NCBI GenBank assembly: GCA_002269645.1
Contig: NIVC01000639.1
Coordinates: 4,782-68,781 of the forward strand
From: Macrostomum lignano
Lineage: Eukaryota
Reading direction: 5' to 3'
Length of the DNA: 64,000 bases
The position numbers and the translations under genes were made by a program. Positions 13,236 to 61,512 of the stretch are shown here, piece after piece. A model generated the notes under the pieces. It had not been told where the DNA came from. It did not search any database and was given only the letters and a program-made list of their open reading frames with translations. Numbering within the stretch: the stretch's first letter is position 1; every line of letters starts with the position of its first letter.

Positions 13236-13485
13236 CCCTTTTAGAAGGGGGTTGGTCAGATTGGTATGCACAGGCTGGTGATGCTCTGCGGGAAACCCGG
13301 AGAATGCCTTCACAATTCCTTCGACAAATAGGTGCTAAAACATTGGATTCCTTCCGGTATATCCAATTGCCTTTGGAAAACTGAAACCAGTCAACAGCAC
13401 CAGAGGGTAAAATGTGTTCAGGCTAGATTGACACATCCGCACACTGCCAGCGCTCCAGCATCCGGGATGCCTCCTCATTCCAGAC

Positions 13486-14810
13486 ATGACCGACGCAGGC
13501 GAAGGCGCCAGCCTACTGGAGGATCTTGTCGACACTTCGCCGGTGCCATCGACAGCGGCGCCCGCGAACGCCGCCAAGGACCCGCTGCACCTGACGGCCT
13601 ACACGGTGATGGCGGCCATCATGGCGGTGGGCCTGGCCGGCAACCTCATCGTGCTGCTCGTGTACGCCAGGAAGAAGGACGGCCACGCCGCCAACGTCTT
13701 CATCCTCAGCCTGGCCGTGTCGGACCTCATCGCCTGCTGCCTGGTCATCCCATGTCCATCGCCATGGAGGTCAACGACTACATGAGCAGCGCGCTGGCCT
13801 GCAAGCTGTACTACCTGCTGAACTGCAGCGGCATCCCCTTCTCGTCCATGCTCATGGCCGCCATCGCGGTTGAGCGCTACTTCTGCATCTGCCGGCCCTT
13901 CCTGCGCGCCATCACGGTGCCGCGCGCCAAGGCCATCGTGCTGAGCCTCGGCGCCGTCGCCTTCTCCCTCGGCCTGGCCATCGCCGTCTTCTGCAGCGTG
14001 GTCGTCCGCCGCGTCGACGGCGACATTGGCAACGGCACAGAGACAGCCGCGTTGGAGTTCGCCGACTACGGCGAGTGTCGCGAGATCAGCGAGCTGAAGC
14101 GCAGCCTCGCCAACGAGTCAGCGGCCACAGCATCGCGGATCACAATCTCAGACGCCAGCCTGGTGTTCTTCAACATCTTCCAGAAGCTGCACCTGTCCCT
14201 GTTCGGCGTCTGCATCGCGCTGGTGTTCGCTCTGTACGTCCGCATCTACCTGTCCGTGCTGCGCCTGCGCCGCAAGAAGCGCGAGCGGCAGCAGAACCGC
14301 CAGCAGCTCGAGCGGCTCGGCACCGTCGCCAACAACGGGGGCGGAGGCGACGCCGGCGCCGAAGAGCCGCGGCCAAGCGGCGGCCGGGCGCAGAGCCGGC
14401 GCAAGTCGCTTCGCCTGGTGGACAGCGACGCGCTGCAGAACCTGAAGACTGCCGCCATGCTGTTCGTGGTGACCATCGTCTTCACGGGCACCTTCATCCC
14501 CGCCGCGCTGATGATCGTGAAAGTGATCGGCTTCAACGTGCTCATCTTCTACCTGTACTACCTGACCCACGCCACCAACCCGCTCATCTACTGCTTCATG
14601 AACCGCAACTTTCGCGAGGACCTGCGAAAACTTTTCTGCCCTGGAGCCGCCCAACAGCGGCAGCAGCGGGAGCGGCAGCGGCTGCAGGAGCAGCATCAGC
14701 AGCGGCAGCAGCAGGTGCAGCAGCGGCTTCTTCAGACGCCTGAGAACCTCGACACTGCCGAAGAAGAGCGGCAGGAGTGCCGCGAGTGGATTGAGGCCTC
14801 CTGCGTGTGA
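13486..14810 (+). CDS. Intronless class A (rhodopsin-like) GPCR, peptide-receptor-like orphan; 1-nt loss at ~13750
   Basis: TM1 GLAGN, TM2 LSLAVSDL, then after a one-base shift (ATC CC(C) ATG) TM3 CKL...IAVERYFCICRP, TM5, TM6, TM7 TNPLIY; poly-Q-rich C-tail ending SCV*. Confidence 0.92.
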
Positions 14811-33919: not shown

Positions 33920-34804
33920 CTGCGGGACATTGCCGCGGGGTTTTCGCGACCGTGAGTCATTTTCTATTGTTGTGGTCGCTATTTTGGTTTAGTTGTTGAT
34001 AACGTTGTTACTATTGTCATTTTTGCTGTTTTCGTTGCTGTTGTTGCTATGATATTTCTCCCAACATTTTAGTAAATATTTCGGAGCACCTGCAGTTTCT
34101 ATGTTGATTTGTTTAACCAGCTGATTCACGTGATTTTGTGATTCATACCAGCTGAGTCATGTGACACCACTTCGGGATATTATTGTCTGCTCAAGAAAGG
34201 AGTTTCAGTTTTCCTGCCTTCCCGAATGTCGCTGACATTCGAGATGAACTCGGGGCAGTCGCTACTGTGAGTCTTGAATGATGGGGCGAAACAAAGGAAG
34301 CTGCATTGCAAGGTGAGTATTAGGGGAAGCCTCGCGCTGGCACAAGCTTATTCAGTTAACCCTGATCAAGTGAGGCTAGAGAGTGTAGCAGCAAAACTGC
34401 AAAGTTTCCCAATTTGTTTTTAACTTGATTTGCTTCAAGAGCCAAGCCAATTAATTTGAGTCTCAGCTCAGAGTCGGTTGAAAAATTTGAGATTTGCAAC
34501 GGGTCATCTGTGACCCGCCACTGAGCTTTTGGGAGACAATCAATGGGATCTTTTTTGTCCTTCCTTCTCACTCTCCGTTAATCTTTCTGTTGTTTATCAA
34601 GAACACAAAACAAATCTCCAAGGACTGCGGAAGGCGTTAATTTGATTGCTATGAATTCAAGTAAACAAGTCTTTTAGTGATCGGTTTCAGAGTGACGACT
34701 GTCTTGCCTGCTCAATATTGCAGAGGCCCACAAAAATATTCCCATAGGGCTGCTCGGACTCGATGGCAGAGAATAGCTTTCCAGCTGCCTTGTTTATCCC
34801 CAGC

Positions 34805-36005
34805 TGCTCTGCTCACTGCTCTTCTCACTGCTCTTCTCACTGCTCTCCTCACTGCTCTCCTCACTGCTCTCCTCACTGCTCTCCTCAGTGCTCTCCTCAC
34901 TGCTCTCCTCACTGCTCTCCTCACTGCCCTCCTCACTGCTCTCCTCACTGCCCTCCTCACTGCTCTCCTCACTGCCCTCCTCACTGCTCTCCTCACTGCT
35001 CTTCTCACTGCTCTTCTCACTGCTCTTCTCACTGCTCTCCTCACTGCTCTCCTCACTGCTCTCCTCACTGTTCTCCTCACTGCTCTTCTCACTGCTCTCC
35101 TCACTGCTCTCCTCACTGCTCTCCTCACTGCTCTCCTCACTGCTCTCCTCACTGCTCTTCTCACTGCTCTCCTCACTGCTCTCCTCACTGCTCTCCTCAC
35201 TGCTCTCCTCACTGCTCTCCTCACTGCTCTCCTCACTGCTCTCCTCACTGCTCTCCTCACTGCTCTCCTCACTGCTCTCCTCACTGCTCTCCTCACTGCT
35301 CTCCTCACTGCTCTCCTCACTGCTCTCCTCACTGCTCTCCTCACTGCTCTCCTCACTGCTCTCCTCACTGCTCTCCTCACTGCTCTCCTCACTGCTCTCC
35401 TCACTGCTCTCCTCACTGCTCTCCTCACTGCTCTCCTCACTGCTCTCCCACTGCTCTCCTCACTGCTCTCCTCACTGCTCTCCTCACTGCTCTCCTCACT
35501 GCTCTCCTCACTGCTCTCCTCACTGCTCTCCTTACTGCTCTCCTCACTGCTCTCCTCACTGCTCTCCTCACTGCTCTCCTCACTGCTCTCCTCACTGCTC
35601 TCCTCACTGCTCTCCTCACTGCTCTCCTCACTGCTCTCCTCACTGCTCTTCTCACTGCTCTCCTCACTGCTCTCCTCACTGCTCTTCTCACTGCTCTCCT
35701 CACTGCTCTCCTCACTGCTCTCCTCACTGCTCTCCTCAATGCTCTCCTCACTGCTCTCCTCACTGCTCTCCTCACTGCTCTCCTCACTGCCCCCCTCACT
35801 GCTCTCCTCACTGTTCTCCTCACTGCTCTCCTCACTGCTCTTCTCACTGTTCTCCTCACTGCTCTCCTCACTGCTCTCCTCACTGCTCTCCTCACTGCTC
35901 TCCTCACTGCTCTCCTCACTGCTCTCCTCACTGCTCTCCTCACTGCCCCCCTCACTGCTCTCCTCACTGTTCTCCTCACTGCTCTCCTCACTGCCCCCCT
36001 CACTG
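34805..36005. repeat. 12-bp repeat (CTCCTCACTGCT)n, ~100 copies
   Basis: Direct reading; GPCR intron 4. Confidence 0.98.
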
Positions 36006-36581
36006 CGCCCCTGCCTCTGGCACCCCGGTTTCGGCTTGTCCCAAACTATTTAGAAATTCGACGAATTCTCGACTTTCATTCTGCCAGAACTGCGGCATCG
36101 AGTATTGAGCAGAGCGCCATGCTCAAATTTCTTACTGCCACATGCAACTGTCCGAAACTTCATCCCTCCGGTCAGAAGCTGTTTTTCAGAATATGAGAAA
36201 GCTGCTCAATTTAGAGCAAAATGAGCAACAAAAATTGTTGCTTTGCTTACAGAATCCAGGAAACCAAAATTCTTTTTCCACACTTTTTGAGTTTTTAGGT
36301 AGGGCGACGATTCATAATTCATAATCCGCTAAATCCGTCTGGCCCCGGCAACATGTCTTCACGCGCGCCACTCATCATTTCGGGTGCACGAGCGATCTAA
36401 AAGTACATCACACCGCCCGAAGCCAGCCAAGAAGAATTCGGGCTAAACTGAAGTCCTTCTGCTCGAACAGCTGAGTTTGGCAAATCTTCTTAACCGGCTA
36501 ATTTGTCGCGGATTCCCAGGTGGGCTGTCTTTAATTCGTCATGGCATGAAAGCTTGGGGGATCAAATTGTAATTAACTCAC

Positions 36582-55338: not shown

Positions 55339-55608
55339 ATGGCCGAAGCCGAAAACGCCAAGGAGATCGAACCCGCGACCGCCGCCGATGGGCAGCAGCA
55401 GCAGCAGGCGGGAGGCATCAGGCAGCGAATCCGCGGCCTGCTGAAGAGGAAGGACCGGCAGAAGCAGCAGAAGGAGCGGCCGGATGACGCGGTGAAGCTG
55501 GGCTGCGGCGGCCTGTTCCGCCGGAAGAAGCGGGCGGAGGCGGGCGATCAGGAGTCGCAGAAGCCGGCGGAGAAGCCGAAGAAAAGCGGCAAAGGCGGCG
55601 AAGTAAAG
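55339..55608 (+). CDS. Extended profilin-like gene copy 1, exon 1 (basic/Cys-containing N-terminus)
   Basis: MAEAENAKE...GGIRQRIRGLLKRKDRQ...AVKLGCGGLFRRKKR...EVK|gtaggc; phase 0; homologous to 59544-59816. Confidence 0.8.
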
Positions 55609-55734
55609 GTAGGCGAACTGGTTGCAGTTTACTTGAGCTCATTTCCTGCTGCATGAAGTTTTACTTTTTATGATCATATCGGAGCTTTGGCCAGCATGCA
55701 TTTGCTCTGCTTGCTGATTGTACGAAGGGGCATT

Positions 55735-56195
55735 AGGGACATCAGAGACATCAGGGACATCAGGGACATCAGAAACATCAGGGACATCAGGGACATCAGA
55801 AACATCAGGGACATCAGGGACATCAGAAACATCAGGGACATCAGGGACATCAGGGATATCAGAGACATTAGGGACATCAGGGACATCAGAGACAGTAGGG
55901 ACATCAGAAACATCAGGGACATCAGAGACATCAGAGACATTAGGGACATCAGAGACATCAGAGACATTAGGGACATCAGAGACATCAGAGACATTAGGGA
56001 CATCAGGGACAGAAACATTAGGGACATCAGGGACATCAGAAACATTAGGGACATCAGGGACATCAGAAACATTAGGGACGTCAGGGACATCAGGGACATC
56101 AGGGACATCAGGGACATCAGAGACATCAGGGACATCAGGGACATCAGGGACATCAGGGACATCAGGGACATCAGGGACATCAGGGACATCAGGGT
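55735..56195. repeat. 9-bp repeat (CATCAGGGA)n in intron 1
   Basis: Direct reading. Confidence 0.96.
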
Positions 56196-56229
56196 CAGCA
56201 ATGGCCGTAGAACTCAAATTTGCTTCTAG

Positions 56230-56604
56230 GAAGAGAAGCAGGAGGTGGAGCTGCAGCCGCAGCCGCAGCAGCCAGATGCGGCCTCAGCGTCAGCGGCAGA
56301 GCCGGAGACGTCAGCGCTGGAGCAGCCGGCATCGAAAGCGCCGGCGAGACCCGAGAATCCGCCAAGGCCGCTGGTTGAACTGGCGGCGAAGTCTGCGCCA
56401 CAGCCGGACGAGGATGTCAGTGAGAAGACGGAAGAGAACGCAGCGGAAGAGAACGCAGCGGAGGAAGACAAGACGACAGTTCAGAACGGCCACGCTTTGG
56501 AGAGCGAGCCAGAGTCAGAAAATCAGCGACACGAAGAGGCGGAGCGGCAGTTCCAGCAGGCCTCGGTGGACATGGCGGACGTGACGCCGAAGCCGGGAGT
56601 GACA
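56230..56604 (+). CDS. Extended profilin-like gene copy 1, exon 2 (acidic, Pro/Ala-rich linker)
   Basis: ttgcttctag|EEKQEVEL...PARPENPPRPLVELAAK...KPGVT|gtaagg; 375 nt, phase 0/0. Confidence 0.8.
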
Positions 56605-56804
56605 GTAAGGCCTTGAGGCAAAAGTGGCGATTGCTGCCGCAACGGGTATTAGCTGATCAATAGTTTGCTGACCGCAGTATTTCATAGCTACGAGTGTTTA
56701 ATGCTTGCTTTTTTACTCGCCTCGGCTGCTGCTGTTTACTCAACTGGTGAAGGCCGCTTTTGTCGATAAGACCAATTATTGTTGACGGTTTATAGATATC
56801 AGCT

Positions 56805-57080
56805 GCGGGGTCAGGTTGGGGTCAAGCTGGGGACAGGCTGGGGTCAGGCTATGGTCAAGCTGGGGTCAGGCTGGGGTCAGGCTGGGGTCAGGCTAGGGTC
56901 AGGCTAGGGTCAGGCTGGGGTCAGGCTGGGGGCAGGCTGGGGACAGGCTGGGGACAGGCTGGGGACAGGCTGGGGACAGGCTGGGGACAGGCTGGGGGCA
57001 GGCTGGGGTCAGGCTAGGGTCAGGCTAGGGTCAGGCTGGGGTCAGGCTGGGGGCAGGCTGGGGGCAGGCTGAAGTCAGGC
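56805..57080. repeat. 11-bp repeat (GGGGTCAGGCT)n in intron 2
   Basis: Direct reading. Confidence 0.95.
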
Positions 57081-57251
57081 TGAGCGAATGCTTGATACAT
57101 GTATGAAACGCCAAGCAGTTCTACTCATAGTAGTGAAAGGAAGATATGTAGATAAATCTTGTAAAAGCGCTGCCGTATATACAGGGGGATAAAAAGACTG
57201 CTGCTTACATTATTTCTGAGAGCGCAAACATTTGGCCATTTCTGCTTTCAG

Positions 57252-57698
57252 ATTGAGCAGGGCCCGCACACGGAGATATGGTCCAGCATCATTAACAAGA
57301 GCTTCATCGGTACCGGAGCCTTCAAGCGAGCCGCGGTCTGCAGCCTGGAGTCTGGCGCCGTGCTGGCCTGCAACCCCGCTGACTTCACGCCCACCGTGCA
57401 GCAGGTGGCCGCCCTGCGCGAGAACTTCGACTGCCGCTCCGGCCTGTCCGCGGCCGGCTTCGGAGTGGCCGACACGGTGTACAGCCTGCTGGACGAGGCC
57501 GGCACCAAGGACATTCTGTGCGGCAGCGACGAATCGCGCGGCCAGACGCTGCTGGTCTGCAAAACGAAGACGGCGCTGCTGGCGGCCGCGTGCCAGGGCG
57601 CCCCGGACCGCGCCGCCGACATGCTGGGCGACATGCGGCAGCACTTCATCTCGCAGGGATGTGAGGGCTGCCCGACTGCAAGCGCCGAGTCTCAGTAA
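57252..57698 (+). CDS. Extended profilin-like gene copy 1, exon 3: profilin-like domain
   Basis: ctttcag|IEQGPHTEIWSSIINKSFIGTGAFKRAAVCSLESGAVLA...TLLVCKTKTALL...LGDMRQHFISQG follows the profilin pattern (W...GTG..AA...G; KT...; helix ending ISQG). Comparison with copy 2 suggests one missing G, so the true stop may be TGA 57662-57664. Confidence 0.8.
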   Translation: MEQGPHTEIWSSIINKSFIGTGAFKRAAVCSLESGAVLACNPADFTPTVQQVAALRENFDCRSGLSAAGFGVADTVYSLLDEAGTKDILCGSDESRGQTLLVCKTKTALLAAACQGAPDRAADMLGDMRQHFISQGCEGCPTASAESQ

Positions 57699-58582
57699 GA
57701 CGCAGCAGCACTTCAAATCTATGGAAATATTTTTAGGCATTGGTGAGGAGGATTTCCAAGTTATTTTAGCACTAGAACTCACTTCCTGAGCATTCGAAAG
57801 TGAATTTTAAAAGTACAAATTTCAGTTTATACTTAATCAAAAGTTTTCAAACGGTTAAAACTTAAACTGCAACTAATGCAGTTCCGGAAATCTTCCAATC
57901 CGATTGTAACATTAAAACAAATGTAGTTCTGCTGATTTGAAGTGTTCATCTGTCTCTGGACCCCGACTGGTTGACAGACAACATTGTGGCTTCCCATTGA
58001 CGTGTCGAATGCATGATTATTAAATTTTCATCTGCATCATTAGCCTAGCAATGAAGCCGCGCTCTGCTGCGAATGCCAGTGGCGGATTTGGTTTTTACTG
58101 TTATCGTTTTATTTACGTAATAAATTTTTAACATTTTGTGTTTCTTTTGGCTCCAATTCAAACTGTCAGCAGATTTTTATGATTAGAGCAATCAGCTGAT
58201 GATTTTGCTTTCCTAAAAAAACTAGGAATATTCGACTCTAGGATCCTACTTTTTGATTATAATATATCTGTACTCGATGGCTTATCAAATAAAAATTTAC
58301 TTTTCCTGTCTCAAGCTTCCGATATTTTATTATCATTAAAGCGGCCCAGCTCTTCAGTCAGCTCTGGTGACTGACTCGTCAGATATTGACTTTTCTGCTG
58401 TAAATGCGCGCCCAATGACTGATTGGCAGTTACCCATATCATTAACATAATGAGTTGCACCTGCGATTTTCAGCCAGATGCTATAAATAAAATTGATATT
58501 TCAGCTGAAAAATGTCAATTTTTCAAAATGCAATTTCAGCTGAAAAATACTCAACCCTTTGTTGTAATTTTCGTGAAATTCT

Positions 58583-59150
58583 CACTATGAGCAGGCCAGC
58601 TATTCTCACTATGAGCAGACCAGCTATTCTCACTATGAGCAGACCAGCTATTCTCACTATGAGCAGACCAGCTATTCTCACTATGAGCAGATCAGCTATT
58701 CTCACTATGAGCAGACCAGCTATTCTCACTATGAGCAGACCAGCTATTCTCACTATGAGCAGACCAGCTATTCTCACTATGAGCAGATCAGCTATTCTCA
58801 CTATGAGCAGATCAGCTATTCTCACTATGAGCAGACCAGCTATTCTCACTATGAGCAGACCAGCTATTCTCACTATGAGCAGACCAGCTATTCTTTACTA
58901 TGAGCAGACCAGCTATTCTCACTATGAGCAGATCAGCTATTCTCACTATGAGCAGACCAGCTATTCTCACTATGAGCAGACCAGCTATTCTCACTATGAG
59001 CAGATCAGCTATTCTCACTATGAGCAGACCAGCTATTCTCACTATGAGCAGACCAGCTATTCTCACTATGAGCAGACCAGCTATTCTCACTATGAGCAGG
59101 CCAGCTATTCTCACTATGAGCAGGCCAGCTATTCTCACTATGAGCAGGCT
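58583..59150. repeat. 24-bp minisatellite (TATTCTCACTATGAGCAGACCAGC)n between the two profilin-like genes
   Basis: About 23 copies. Confidence 0.97.
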
Positions 59151-59543
59151 ATAACTAATTAATCATTTAAGACGCAAATTATGTCATGCCATACCACATG
59201 CCCCTACGGGCCCATTGACCCGCAAGAATGATTGCGTCACGACTGCGCTGACATATTGAAACGCATGAGTCACATGAGCAGGTTAGTATCAGCAGGTGAC
59301 GCAATACCTTTGATAAGAATGCTTTGATAACGCAGCTCGTGGTGACCACACAGCCCAGACACCACGTGCTCTGCTTTCTATCAAGAGTTTTTGGCACGGT
59401 GGATTCCCGTGGCGACTCGCTTATTAGCAAGCTCAAGTTTATAAGGCCCGCTCCGGGCCGCAAGTATGCAGCAAGACAGCAGCTGGTTAACCAGCCAGAA
59501 TCAATCAATGCTCAGCGGCTTCAGCTTCAGCTTCGATTTCACA

Positions 59544-59816
59544 ATGACTGAGCAGGGCCGCTACAGCAGCGGTGAGGTCGAACCTGAGACCGTCGGCGAC
59601 GATCCGCCGCAGCAGCAGAGAAAGCAGGCAGCTGGAGGCGGCCTGAGGCAACGAATCCGCGACCTGCTGCTGAGGCGGAACCGCGACCGCAGGCGCAGGC
59701 AGCAGAAGGAGTGGCGGCCCGCTGACGACTCGGTGAAGCTGCTGGGCTTCTGCGGGTTGCTGCACCGGACGAAGCGCAGGGAGTCTGGAGCCGGCTGCAT
59801 CAAGAAGCCGTCAGAG
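59544..59816 (+). CDS. Extended profilin-like gene copy 2, exon 1
   Basis: MTEQGRYS...GGGLRQRIRDLLLRRNRDR...SVKLLGFCGLLHRTKRR...KPSE|gtaggt; 273 nt, phase 0. Confidence 0.8.
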
Positions 59817-59910
59817 GTAGGTTGGAAGCCATTTTCCTGATTCGTCAACTTTTTGGCAACTTGCCAAGGCCAGCAAATTCATTAAAGCGATGCTCGCCCC
59901 TTGCTTCTAG

Positions 59911-60480
59911 GAGCAGGAGTTGGAAGATCGGCAGCAGAGTGATTCGGCCACCAAGCCGGAGCTGTCATCGGAGCAGCCGGCGGCGTTGACAGCGCCAGCC
60001 CGACTGGAGAGTCCACCGCGGCCTCTGCTGGAGTTGGCAAAAAAAACACGGGAAGAGAAGACACCGGAAGAAAAGACACCGGAAGAGAAGACACCGGACA
60101 AGAAGACGCCGGAAGAGAAGACACCGGAAGAGAAGACACCGGACAAGAAGACGCCGGAAGAGAAGACACGGGAAGAGAAGACACCGGAAGAGAAGACACC
60201 GGACAAGAAGACACTGGACGAGAAGACACTGAACGAGAAGAGGCCGGAAGAAAAGACACCGGACGAGAAGACACCGGACGAGAAGACACCGGACGAGAAG
60301 ACAACGAAAGAAGAGACGCCCGAAAAGAAGACACCGGAAGCGAAAAAGAAGGCAACAGCGAAGAGCGGCTCCAAAAAGAAGACACCGAAGAAGAAGACAA
60401 TTGAAAAGAAGACACCAGAAAATTCGATAACGGAAGAGAACACCCCGGAAGACGCTGCAAGCATACCAGCCAAGCCAGAA
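59911..60480 (+). CDS. Extended profilin-like gene copy 2, exon 2 with EEKTP pentapeptide repeats
   Basis: ttgcttctag|EQELEDR...PARLESPPRPLLELAKK-(EEKTP/DKKTP)n...PAKPE|gtaagt; 570 nt, phase 0/0. Confidence 0.8.
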
Positions 60481-60649
60481 GTAAGTGTAATACCCAAATG
60501 GAAACAGTTATTTACTTCTCAAGACTCAGGGCCCGCTAAATTCGAAGCTCAAAACCATTCTTAATGACGACAGCATTGAATTTCTCTGAATAAACTCTGG
60601 CACGCCAGAACTAAACAAAAACGATGACGTTTACCCGCGTCAGCCGCAG

Positions 60650-61063
60650 ATGAACCTGGGCCCACACGCGGAGATGTGGTCCAGCATCATTAACAAGAGC
60701 TTCATCGGTACCGGAGCCTTCAAGCGAGCCGCGGTCTGCAGCCTGGAGTCTGGCGCCGTGCTGGCCTGCAACCCCGCTGACTTCACGCCCACCGTGCAGC
60801 AGGTGGCCGCCCTGCGCGAGAACTTCGACTGCCGCTCCGGCCTGTCCGCGGCCGGCTTCGGAGTGGCCGACACGGTGTACAGCCTGCTGGACGAGGCCGG
60901 CACCAAGGAAATTCTGTGCGGCAGCGACGAATCGCGCGGCCAGACGCTGCTGGTCTGCAAAACGAAGACGGCGCTGCTGGCGGCCGCGTGCCAGGGCGCC
61001 CCGGACCGCGCCGCCGACATGCTGGGCGACATGCGGCAGCACTTCATCTCGCAGGGGATTTGA
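60650..61063 (+). CDS. Extended profilin-like gene copy 2, exon 3: profilin-like domain
   Basis: ccgcag|MNLGPHAEMWSSIINKSFIGTG...QHFISQGI*; near-identical to 57252-57660. Confidence 0.85.
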   Translation: MNLGPHAEMWSSIINKSFIGTGAFKRAAVCSLESGAVLACNPADFTPTVQQVAALRENFDCRSGLSAAGFGVADTVYSLLDEAGTKEILCGSDESRGQTLLVCKTKTALLAAACQGAPDRAADMLGDMRQHFISQGI

Positions 61064-61512
61064 GGGCTGTGCGGCAGATGTGGAAAAGAATAGATAAGAC
61101 CATTCAACTTATTTTACGGTATTCGTTCGCATAAGTATCATTGCTGTTTTACTTCTCAGCTTTTATAAAGTAAAAGTAATGCGCTGTCTCATTTTATGAA
61201 CGCATTAAAGATAATGTTGCTAATTTCAAAGGAGCTTTGCAAGGGCGCTGCTCAAATAAACGCATTCAACGTCAGGTGAGTCTACTTCAAAACTCATGAC
61301 AAAGTATATTTGAATATCCAGTGCGCACTTGGCCAAATTTTTCAAATTCCTTCAAATGCTTGTTTCGTACTTCCTTGACTCTGCTTTAATTAACCAAACA
61401 AGCAGATGTTAAACGAAAGGACGTGTCTATGTTAAAATGCATCTGAGTGGGGTTTGAATAAAGCCGGGCAGAGCACATTATACAAAATCTCAATTGTCCC
61501 AATGCTGCTCAG

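What the first reader, a model, noticed from the sequence alone, without database searches (positions are those of the whole stretch)
55339..61063. Tandem pair of genes encoding profilin-like domains fused to long N-terminal extensions
Seen: two paralogs with the same three-exon, all-phase-0 structure (about 352 and 418 aa). A basic first exon and an acidic, Pro-rich low-complexity second exon are spliced in frame to a complete ~137-aa profilin-like domain. Established: profilins are normally standalone ~125-140-aa proteins whose N-terminal helix forms the poly-proline site. Inference: a tethered profilin architecture that I do not recognise, potentially localising actin-monomer or phosphoinositide binding to a membrane or specialised structure. 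This is the strongest candidate for an undescribed system in the window.
Basis: partly seen in the sequence, partly recalled or inferred. Interest (0 to 1): 0.82.

Follow-up and report, generated by a model that had tools for sequence, protein, structure and literature searches.

The report
Tandem N-terminally extended flatworm profilin genes
Two neighbouring genes of the flatworm Macrostomum lignano encode a divergent profilin domain behind a long disordered tail with a conserved basic, cysteine-containing motif; the layout is real, shared with liver flukes and undescribed in print, but its proposed role as a membrane tether is only inferred.

Summary
Window 55339-61063 carries two tandem three-exon, all-phase-0 genes of Macrostomum lignano. 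Exon 3 of each is a full-length Pfam Profilin match (46.8 and 50.5 bits, cutoff 25) and models as a profilin fold (TM about 0.75 to solved profilins).

Copy 1 is already in GenBank as an RNA-seq-derived model. One model has exons 1-2-3 (PAA79352, 100% identical). A near-identical homeologous locus has a model with exons 1-3. A contig from a related species carries basic tail plus profilin as one uninterrupted ORF. So the fusion is real and exon 2 behaves as a cassette exon. Copy 2 has no transcript evidence.

The genes belong to a small family (19 hits among 1.8 billion representatives) that includes liver and lung flukes. Many members carry a disordered N-terminal extension with a basic amphipathic segment and a Cys-plus-polybasic motif (GCGGLFRRKKR). 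In all 13 members examined, the domain has replaced residues that canonical profilins need for poly-proline binding (Tyr to Ile) and probably for actin binding (Lys to non-basic).

Best reading: a membrane- or cortex-tethered, functionally diverged profilin paralogue. The tethering is inferred, not shown. It is a new variant of a known kind, of moderate interest.

The parts
55339..55608 (+). Copy 1 exon 1 (90 aa). Basic, disordered N-terminal module with the motifs GGIRQRIRGLLKRK and KLGCGGLFRRKKR.
   Evidence: for sequence and splice sites; pI 10.0; motifs conserved in paralogues; pLDDT below 50.
55726..56194 (.). 9-nt minisatellite (AGGGACATC, about 52 copies) filling most of copy 1 intron 1.
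56230..56604 (+). Copy 1 exon 2 (125 aa). Acidic, Pro-rich, disordered phase-0 cassette exon ending in a predicted helix (EEAERQFQQASVDM).
   Evidence: pI 4.2; included in P0001 and skipped in P0003, although present at 100% identity in that locus; helix at residues 223-242 of P0001; helix motif conserved in P0006.
56807..57082 (.). 11-nt minisatellite (GGGGTCAGGCT, about 25 copies) in copy 1 intron 2.
57252..57698 (+). Copy 1 exon 3. Complete divergent profilin domain plus a 12-aa tail (CEGCPTASAESQ) caused by a G-run at 57656-57658 that is one base shorter than in the homeologous loci.
   Evidence: Pfam Profilin 46.8 bits; profilin fold. G-run difference.
58578..59147 (.). 24-nt minisatellite (about 24 copies, 97% matches) in the spacer between the two genes.
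59544..59816 (+). Copy 2 exon 1 (91 aa). Basic module with GGLRQRIRDLLLRR and a degraded Cys motif LLGFCGLLHRTKRR. The upstream in-frame ATG at 59466 is not conserved.
   Evidence: the 59466 equivalent is CTG in L003, and there are 1 non-synonymous and 3 synonymous changes downstream of 59544; pI 10.6.
59911..60480 (+). Copy 2 exon 2 (190 aa). K/E/T/P-rich repeat spacer, about 20 copies of a 15-nt unit. It keeps the APARxxxPPRPLxELAxK motif but lacks the pre-domain helix.
   Evidence: repeat number differs and there is a 1-nt frameshift in homeolog L003.
60650..61063 (+). Copy 2 exon 3. Complete profilin domain (137 aa) that begins with its own ATG directly after the acceptor. There is an alternative in-frame acceptor at 60644.
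   Evidence: Pfam Profilin 50.5 bits.. P0039 uses the 60644 acceptor.
57260..57670 (+). Copy 1 side of the gene-conversion tract. The partner tract in copy 2 is 60658-61069. The two are about 98-99% identical and confined to the profilin coding sequence.
   Evidence: e3 is 98% identical in nucleotides. Exon 1 matches only at about 68% over 203 nt, and the sequences flanking exon 3 are unrelated. Both copies share locus-specific variants.

Best explanation
The locus is a tandem pair of Macrostomum lignano genes from a small, mainly flatworm subfamily of profilin-domain proteins.

Shown: each gene has three phase-0 exons. Exon 1 encodes a basic, intrinsically disordered N-terminal module. Exon 2 encodes a disordered spacer. 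Exon 3 encodes a complete but divergent profilin fold. For copy 1, RNA-derived models exist with and without exon 2, so exon 2 acts as a cassette. Exon 1 joined to exon 3 recreates a motif that is contiguous in other family members, so this looks like the ancestral layout. The profilin exon of the two copies is homogenised by gene conversion.

Inferred: the N-terminal module is a peripheral-membrane or cortex targeting device. It has a basic amphipathic segment followed by a hydrophobic-Cys-polybasic motif (GCGGLFRRKKR). That combination suits electrostatic binding to acidic lipids, reinforced by S-acylation of the Cys. It would hold the profilin fold at a membrane, and the optional exon 2 would set the length and charge of the leash.

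The domain has lost residues that canonical profilins need for poly-proline binding and probably for actin binding. It therefore more likely works as a specialised or repurposed profilin-fold adaptor than as a classic actin-monomer shuttle. A separate free profilin, like the Fasciola one, presumably does the housekeeping job.
For: Identity:
- Pfam Profilin hits over the full profile length.
- The family profile matches Acanthamoeba, S. pombe and yeast profilins at E = 2e-14 to 2e-11.
- The AF2 domain has pLDDT 60-84, and the top Foldseek hits, more than 30, are all profilins with TM-score about 0.75 normalised to the target.

Fusion is real:
- P0001 (PAA79352) equals e1-e2-e3 at 100% identity. 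P0003 equals e1-e3, although exon 2 is present in its locus.
- GenBank models for this assembly are built only from RNA-seq transcripts.
- Logan contig L001 from a relative has one uninterrupted ORF from basic tail to profilin.
- The distant paralogue Mlig010505 has the same three exons and the same e2|e3 boundary, GGVK|IEQ.

Targeting module:
- The extension is predicted disordered and basic.
- The GCGGLF(R/K)RK(K/T)R motif is conserved between paralogue groups that are only about 41% identical.
- Similar motifs occur in Opisthorchis/Clonorchis (SLFSCTMRRSRRSR), Calicophoron and Dicrocoelium.
- An HMM built from Macrostomum extensions scores four non-Macrostomum extensions above all but 1 to 6 of 300 composition-matched shuffles.
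- Another family member starts MGNKSSS followed by a basic cluster, a myristoylation-type pattern.
- Liver flukes annotate long (module-bearing) and short isoforms from one gene.

Diverged domain:
- S. pombe Y5 is Ile in 13 of 13 members, W30 is never Trp, and the K81 equivalent is never basic.
- Y5D lowers poly-L-proline affinity 100-fold and K81E abolishes actin affinity.
- A free canonical 130-aa profilin exists in Fasciola.

Gene conversion.
Against: - There is no localisation, acylation or binding data for any member.
- The motif similarity to trematodes is weak (HMM scores of 6-10 bits) and absent for two members (P0013, P0035).
- The window proteins start MAE and MTE, so they cannot be N-myristoylated.
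- The Clonorchis MGCSNV isoform fails the PROSITE myristoylation pattern (note).
- Basic clusters such as RRKKR and KRKDRQKQQKER fit a nuclear localisation signal equally well.
- The K81 equivalent lies in a gapped loop. HMMER and MAFFT place it on different residues (Ser versus Glu), though neither is basic.
- Ile in place of Tyr is still hydrophobic, so some poly-proline binding could remain.
- Copy 2 lacks any transcript model, and its Cys motif and pre-domain helix are degraded.
- P0001 and P0003 sit on near-identical homeologous loci, where RNA-seq reads multi-map. Isoforms therefore cannot be assigned to this particular locus.
Confidence: 0.5

Rival explanations
1. A free, standalone profilin is the main product, at least for copy 2. 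Exon 3 is used on its own, either through SL trans-splicing onto its phase-0 acceptor or from copy 2's own ATG at 60650. Exons 1 and 2 are then an outron, a 5' UTR or a minor isoform.
For: - The M. lignano spliced leader ends in ...TTGCATG. Trans-splicing to any phase-0 acceptor would therefore supply an in-frame Met.
- 38.8% of M. lignano genes are trans-spliced.
- Copy 2 exon 3 begins with an ATG directly after the AG, and this is conserved in all three loci.
- Copy 2 has no annotated fusion model.
- Liver-fluke orthologues have short isoforms without the module.
Against: - For copy 1, RNA-derived models join exon 3 to exon 2 or to exon 1.
- A relative's contig has the fused ORF.
- The paralogue Mlig010505 is modelled as a fusion.
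- No gene with exactly the 137-aa product is on record.
- The residues just upstream of the domain (G-x-V-x-F-E/D) are conserved across the family, which argues that they are translated.
Confidence: 0.2
2. Copy 2 is a decaying duplicate. Its extension exons are drifting toward pseudogene status, and its profilin exon only looks intact because gene conversion from copy 1 keeps overwriting it.
For: - There is no GenBank model for copy 2.
- The Cys motif is degraded to LGFCGLLHRTKRR and the pre-domain helix is lost.
- Exon 2 has expanded into a variable 15-nt repeat.
- Homeolog L003 has a 1-nt deletion and a stop codon in exon 2.
- The conversion tract covers exactly the profilin coding sequence.
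Against: - All three exons are open and all splice sites are intact in the window and in L002.
- Exon 1 shows 1 non-synonymous and 3 synonymous differences between homeologs.
- GC3 is 0.84 in exon 1 and 0.65 in exon 2, which looks like coding sequence.
- The absence of a model can be explained by the GenBank filter that removed transcripts overlapping repeats.
- The L003 frameshift could be an assembly error.
- An older predictor joined copy 2's e1-e2-e3 in frame.
Confidence: 0.25
3. The basic module is not a membrane anchor. It could be a nuclear localisation signal or a calmodulin/IQ-like or nucleic-acid-binding segment, making this a nuclear or otherwise non-membrane profilin isoform.
For: - Clusters such as KRKDRQKQQKER...RRKKR in copy 1 and RRNRDRRRRQQK...RTKRR in copy 2 resemble a bipartite NLS by inspection.
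- IRQRIRGLLKR loosely resembles an IQ motif (I at position 1, R at 6, G at 7, R at 11) and is the most amphipathic 14-mer in exon 1.
Against: - Pfam finds no IQ or other domain in the extension, even at E <= 10.
- The most conserved feature is the Cys flanked by hydrophobic and basic residues, which an NLS does not need.
- One relative replaces the module with a myristoylation-type MGNKSSS start followed by a basic cluster, which points to membranes.
Confidence: 0.15

Closest known systems
Canonical eukaryotic profilins (Pfam PF00235; e.g. Acanthamoeba profilin I/II 1ACF/2ACG, S. pombe Cdc3 3D9Y, yeast 1YPR)
   Same: They share full-length HMM and profile matches, the same fold and order of secondary-structure elements, the conserved N-terminal Trp and the C-terminal aromatic residue.
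   Different: Canonical profilins are standalone proteins of about 125-140 aa. The proteins here carry 90-280 extra N-terminal residues. The poly-proline-site Tyr is Ile, the second Trp is lost, and the residue aligned to the actin-critical Lys is never basic. Sequence identity is only about 15-26%.
Fasciola hepatica FhProfilin (D915_008168; PMC7727368)
   Same: It is a flatworm profilin-family protein.
   Different: FhProfilin is a free 130-aa protein with conserved proline-binding residues. It binds poly-L-proline, sequesters actin and does not bind PIPs. It has no extension.
Asgard-archaeal profilins with N-terminal extensions (Heimdallarchaeota, Thorarchaeota; PMC8410842, bioRxiv 10.1101/2021.08.06.455371)
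   Same: They have a profilin fold preceded by an extra N-terminal segment, and were the only extended profilins that turned up in the literature search.
   Different: They are archaeal and their extensions are short. They have no polybasic/Cys motif, no cassette exon and no evident relationship to the flatworm family. Only titles and abstracts were read.
Acylated, polybasic peripheral-membrane anchors (GAP-43/neuromodulin, MARCKS, Src-type myristoyl-plus-basic N-termini). This is a functional analogy from my general knowledge, not a tested relationship.
   Same: They have a disordered N-terminal region that combines Cys next to basic residues or a basic amphipathic segment. One family member has an MGxxxS start followed by a basic cluster.
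   Different: There is no detectable homology, and acylation and membrane binding were not tested. The effector attached here is a profilin fold.

Membership tests
Profilin (Pfam PF00235) | Sequence match to the family HMM above the curated gathering score, over the full domain length | tested here: met
   46.8 and 50.5 bits against a cutoff of 25, covering profile positions 2/3 to 126/127 of 127; the family profile matches PDB profilins at E = 2e-14.
Profilin (Pfam PF00235) | Profilin fold: N- and C-terminal helices packed on a central antiparallel beta-sheet | tested here: met
   helix-strands-helix order with pLDDT 60-84. Foldseek top hits are all profilins, with TM-score 0.74-0.75 normalised to the target. 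Model confidence is only moderate.
Profilin (Pfam PF00235) | Aromatic poly-L-proline-binding platform (S. pombe W2, Y5, W30 and a C-terminal Tyr) | tested here: not met
   W2 is kept in 12 of 13 members, Y5 is Ile in 13 of 13, W30 is never Trp, and the C-terminal aromatic is kept as Phe or Tyr. Y5D lowers poly-L-proline affinity 100-fold. This was tested by alignment only, not by binding.
Profilin (Pfam PF00235) | Basic actin-contact residue (S. pombe K81) | tested here: inconclusive
   the aligned residue is Ser or Glu in M. lignano and never basic in 13 members. The position lies in a gapped loop and the two aligners differ by two residues.
Profilin (Pfam PF00235) | Small standalone protein of about 125-140 aa | tested here: not met
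   363 and 418 aa; the shortest transcript-supported forms are 227 and 243 aa.
Profilin (Pfam PF00235) | Biochemical binding of G-actin, poly-L-proline and PIP2 | not testable with these tools
   This needs recombinant protein assays such as those used for FhProfilin.
S-acylated / polybasic peripheral membrane proteins (functional class) | Cys flanked by hydrophobic and basic residues in a disordered terminal region | tested here: met
   GCGGLFRRKKR, GCGGLFKRKTR, SLFSCTMRRSRRSR and FGCTGLCAGRRRR; the order-specific similarity exceeds shuffles for four non-Macrostomum members. Copy 2's version is degraded.
S-acylated / polybasic peripheral membrane proteins (functional class) | Demonstrated acylation and membrane localisation | not testable with these tools
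   No experimental data were found.
N-myristoylated proteins | N-terminal Met-Gly with the PROSITE PS00008-type pattern | tested here: not met
   The window proteins start MAEAEN and MTEQGR. Only the unplaced relative P0035 (MGNKSSS) fits the pattern. The Clonorchis MGCSNV isoform fails at position +5.
SL trans-spliced M. lignano genes | Reads joining the spliced leader to an acceptor of the gene | not testable with these tools
The SL sequence itself is not in the window.

The most novel reading that the evidence does not exclude
Flatworms possess a lineage-specific class of lipid-anchored 'pseudo-profilins'. The profilin fold, stripped of its classic poly-proline and actin sites, has been recruited to a new ligand at the plasma membrane, for example in the tegument or epidermal cortex, or in sperm. 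Alternative 5' exons (flukes) or a cassette spacer exon plus tandem duplicates (Macrostomum) switch the protein between anchored, long-leash and free forms. SL trans-splicing onto phase-0 acceptors may add a further free form.
Probability: 0.2. Interest if true: 0.65.

Novelty: new variant of a known kind. Interest (0 to 1): 0.5.

Why it matters
Profilin is one of the most studied actin regulators and is treated as a small free protein. Its free N- and C-terminal helices form the poly-proline site. A conserved animal subfamily with a long targeting tail on that N-terminus and altered classic ligand residues would be a natural experiment in re-using the fold. It would also bear on how actin regulators are localised.

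The family is present in medically important liver and lung flukes (Opisthorchis, Clonorchis, Paragonimus) and was not detected outside a small set of sequences. A parasite-restricted cortical or tegumental protein could therefore be of practical interest.

M. lignano has transgenesis and RNAi, so the hypothesis is directly testable. The locus is also a clean example of gene conversion confined to one exon of tandem duplicates in a neopolyploid genome.

Tried and rejected
2. Looking up copy 2's 137-aa exon 3 ORF found nothing on record. No transcript evidence for or against a free copy 2 profilin could be obtained.
3. Searches for the Mlig gene IDs in papers and in the supplements of the genome paper found nothing. 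No expression pattern was recovered.
4. 'Macrostomum + profilin' as a word-start search matched 'profiling'. The whole-word search gave no relevant paper. A multi-taxon search that did not require 'profilin' was uninformative.
5. I considered that the family might be orthologous to vertebrate profilin-4. This was a recollection only, no PFN4 sequence or structure was available to test it, and the closest solved relatives are amoeba, fungal and plant profilins. I dropped it as unsupported.
6. P0007, a 1322-aa hit with 11 matched stretches in the representative search, is a repeat protein with no profilin features. I treated it as a false positive.
7. An IQ/calmodulin-motif reading of IRQRIRGLLKR has no Pfam support at E <= 10. 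I kept it only as part of a rival.
8. TATA-box searches upstream of either gene found nothing. Poly(A)-signal hexamers occur downstream of both genes but are weak evidence in AT-rich sequence.

Full report
OBSERVATION

The stretch 55339-61063 is eukaryotic sequence with GT..AG introns. Translating the proposed exons gives two genes on the + strand.

Copy 1 has exons 55339-55608, 56230-56604 and 57252-57698, encoding 90, 125 and 148 aa. Copy 2 has exons 59544-59816, 59911-60480 and 60650-61063, encoding 91, 190 and 137 aa. All junctions are phase 0. In every exon the chosen frame has no stops. It is the only such frame except in copy 1 exon 3, where one other frame is also open. Exon GC3 is 0.65-0.90, against 0.38-0.55 GC in introns and spacers.

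Pfam Profilin matches exon 3 of both copies end to end, at 46.8 and 50.5 bits against a cutoff of 25. Exon 1 is basic in both copies (pI 10.0 and 10.6). Copy 1 exon 2 is acidic and Pro-rich (pI 4.2). Copy 2 exon 2 is instead a K/E/T/P repeat built from about 20 copies of a 15-nt unit.

ORGANISM AND EXISTING ANNOTATION

A protein search identified the organism as Macrostomum lignano. It returned PAA79352 (BOX15_Mlig019338g1), which is 100% identical to the three-exon copy 1 over all 363 aa. It also returned a homeologous three-exon protein (Mlig008644g1, 373 aa) and a 227-aa protein (Mlig020979g1) that is exon 1 joined directly to exon 3.

The locus of that 227-aa model (L002) contains exon 2 at 100% identity, so exon 2 is skipped there rather than absent. 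The GenBank annotation of this assembly was built exclusively from RNA-seq transcript assemblies with TransDecoder ORFs. These junctions therefore reflect transcripts. The caveat is that reads multi-map between near-identical homeologous loci.

A 934-nt contig assembled from run SRR28338164 encodes an 80%-identical protein. It has UTR-like flanks, and the basic tail runs straight into the profilin domain in one uninterrupted ORF.

Neither is met for copy 1.

COPY 2

No database protein contains copy 2's exons 1 or 2 as a gene of its own. No gene with exactly its 137-aa exon 3 product is on record. This absence may be an artefact, because transcripts overlapping repeat annotation were removed before GenBank submission and exon 2 is a tandem repeat.

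All three copy 2 exons and their splice sites are conserved in both homeologous loci. Exon 1 differs from L003 by one non-synonymous and three synonymous changes. The upstream ATG at 59466 is CTG in L003, so 59544 is the likely start. L003 has a 1-nt deletion in exon 2 that creates a stop codon.

An older prediction (UniRef A0A1I8IN42, 904 aa) reads through both genes and joins copy 2's three exons in frame via an acceptor at 60644. Another older model joins copy 1 exon 1 to copy 2 exon 3.

Copy 2's status, whether functional gene, free-profilin producer or decaying duplicate, stays open.

CONCERTED EVOLUTION

Exon 3 of the two copies is about 98-99% identical in nucleotides. Exon 1 matches only at about 68% over 203 nt, and the flanks of exon 3 are unrelated. 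The identical tract (57260-57670 and 60658-61069) coincides with the profilin coding sequence.

Both copies in L003 share three variants that both copies in the window and in L002 lack. This is the signature of gene conversion between the tandem copies within each homeologous locus.

THE FAMILY

An exhaustive phmmer search of 1.84 billion representatives found only 19 proteins at E <= 0.001. Named members are:
- a second M. lignano paralogue group of 413-415 aa (Mlig010505, Mlig026365, Mlig019530);
- proteins of the trematodes Dicrocoelium, Calicophoron, Paragonimus, Opisthorchis and Clonorchis.

Others come from unnamed metatranscriptome or run assemblies. Most members are longer than a normal profilin, at 160-415 aa.

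The Mlig010505 gene has the same three exons, with the exon 2-exon 3 boundary at the same residue, GGVK|IEQ. The residues across copy 1's exon 1-exon 3 junction (KKSGKGGEVK|IEQ) match a motif that is contiguous in the other members, KKNxxVxGxVxF(E/D). So e1-e3 is probably the ancestral arrangement and exon 2 is a Macrostomum insertion.

THE EXTENSION

AlphaFold models of both isoforms give pLDDT below 50 for the whole extension. The exception is one helix at the end of exon 2.

Within the extension, a basic amphipathic segment, GG(I/L/F)R..R..L.(R/K)K, is conserved between M. lignano paralogue groups that are about 41% identical overall. So is the motif (L/T)GCGGLF(R/K)RK(K/T)R. The long Opisthorchis/Clonorchis isoform has SRWRRMIGWFR and SLFSCTMRRSRRSR. 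Calicophoron has FGCTGLCAGRRRR and Dicrocoelium has LFSCGALRSR.

An HMM built only from Macrostomum extensions scores the extensions of O. felineus, C. daubneyi, D. dendriticum and P0009 above all but 1, 6, 1 and 1 of 300 composition-matched shuffles. Two other members are not distinguishable from shuffles. The similarity is therefore real but weak.

One member replaces the module with MGNKSSS followed by a basic cluster, a myristoylation-type start. In liver flukes a single gene is annotated with a long module-bearing isoform and shorter isoforms with other first exons.

THE DOMAIN

The family profile hits Acanthamoeba, S. pombe and yeast profilins at E = 2e-14 to 2e-11. The modelled domain matches only profilins at the top of a Foldseek PDB search.

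The ligand sites differ, however. Aligned to S. pombe profilin:
- W2 is kept in 12 of 13 members.
- Y5 is Ile in 13 of 13.
- W30 is never Trp.
- The residue aligned to K81 is never basic.

The K81 position is in a gapped loop, and HMMER and MAFFT place it two residues apart. In S. pombe, Y5D lowers poly-L-proline affinity 100-fold and K81E abolishes actin affinity (PMC2172974, citing Lu and Pollard 2001).

Flatworms also have a free canonical profilin. Fasciola FhProfilin is 130 aa, binds poly-L-proline, sequesters actin and does not bind PIPs (PMC7727368).

MECHANISM

Shown: a real, transcribed fusion of a disordered basic tail to a divergent profilin fold, with an optional spacer exon, conserved from Macrostomorpha to trematodes.

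Inferred: the basic amphipathic segment plus the Cys-polybasic motif act as a peripheral-membrane anchor, through electrostatic binding and S-acylation. The profilin fold, lacking the classic ligand residues, acts as a specialised adaptor rather than an actin-monomer shuttle. Exon 2 tunes the linker.

I put about 0.9 on the architecture being real and about 0.4-0.5 on the membrane-tether mechanism.

Three rivals remain:
1. A free profilin made by SL trans-splicing. The M. lignano leader ends in ATG, so any phase-0 acceptor yields an in-frame start.
2. Copy 2 as a decaying duplicate rescued by gene conversion.
3. The basic module as an NLS or other non-membrane signal.

COMPARISON AND NOVELTY

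By HMM and fold these proteins are members of the profilin family. They fail the family's usual features of size and poly-proline platform.

The only extended profilins found in the literature are archaeal ones with short extensions. No paper on this flatworm subfamily was found. The proteins are, however, deposited as hypothetical proteins and auto-named 'Profilin'.

I rate this a new variant of a known kind and of moderate interest.

Noticed in passing
window 57260-57670 and 60658-61069; L002 and L003 equivalents: The gene-conversion tract between the tandem copies is confined to the profilin coding sequence. Both copies share locus-specific variants in each homeologous locus, while introns and UTRs are unrelated.
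   Followed up: yes
window 57656-57658: The G-run is GGG here and GGGG in both homeologous loci. This shifts the frame just before the stop and adds the tail CEGCPTASAESQ to copy 1. It could be a homopolymer assembly error or a real allele. The same tail is present in GenBank PAA79352.
   Followed up: partly
L003 about 15900 (copy 2 exon 2 equivalent): A 1-nt deletion (GGCAACAGCG to GGCAAC-GCG) breaks the frame of copy 2 exon 2 in one homeolog. The repeat number also differs (731 versus 570 nt).
   Followed up: partly
window 55726-56194, 56807-57082, 58578-59147: Three different minisatellites sit in the two introns of copy 1 and in the spacer between the genes: a 9-mer of about 52 copies, an 11-mer of about 25 copies and a 24-mer of about 24 copies. 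Copy 2's introns are short (94 and 169 nt) and repeat-free.
   Followed up: no
window 56230, 57252, 59911, 60644, 60650 (acceptors): The M. lignano spliced leader ends in ATG. Every phase-0 acceptor in these genes could therefore yield an in-frame start if trans-spliced. Copy 2 exon 3 additionally has its own ATG and a second in-frame acceptor 6 nt upstream.
   Followed up: partly
UniRef A0A1I8IN42 (P0039) and A0A1I8IIT4 (P0040): Older M. lignano gene predictions merge the two tandem genes into one 904-aa protein with two profilin domains, or join copy 1 exon 1 to copy 2 exon 3. These are probably prediction or assembly artefacts. They could instead hint at read-through transcription.
   Followed up: no
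Clonorchis sinensis CSKR_107022 and Opisthorchis felineus CRM22_006658 (P0038, P0041-P0044): One liver-fluke gene is annotated with isoforms of 229, 175 and 161 aa that differ only in the first exon. Only the longest carries the basic/Cys module. The 161-aa form starts MGCSNV.
   Followed up: partly
window 13332-14810 (+): This ORF has a rhodopsin-family 7TM receptor match (Pfam 7tm_1, E = 1.7e-14). It is a GPCR gene fragment elsewhere in the window.
   Followed up: no
window 34763-36196 (+): This 477-aa ORF matches the Pfam C_tripleX cysteine-rich repeat (E = 6.7e-24), in a region where several long ORFs overlap in different frames.
   Followed up: no
window 61513 onward (+); L002 16083-18623, L003 17045-19546: The next gene downstream encodes a protein of 833-846 aa in the homeologous loci, with no Pfam domain. 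The three ORFs that make up its window portion also had no Pfam hit.
   Followed up: no
P0007 (representative search): This 1322-aa repeat protein, with 11 matched stretches to residues 96-147 of the query, scored E = 7e-15. It has no profilin features and appears to be a repeat-driven false positive.
   Followed up: no
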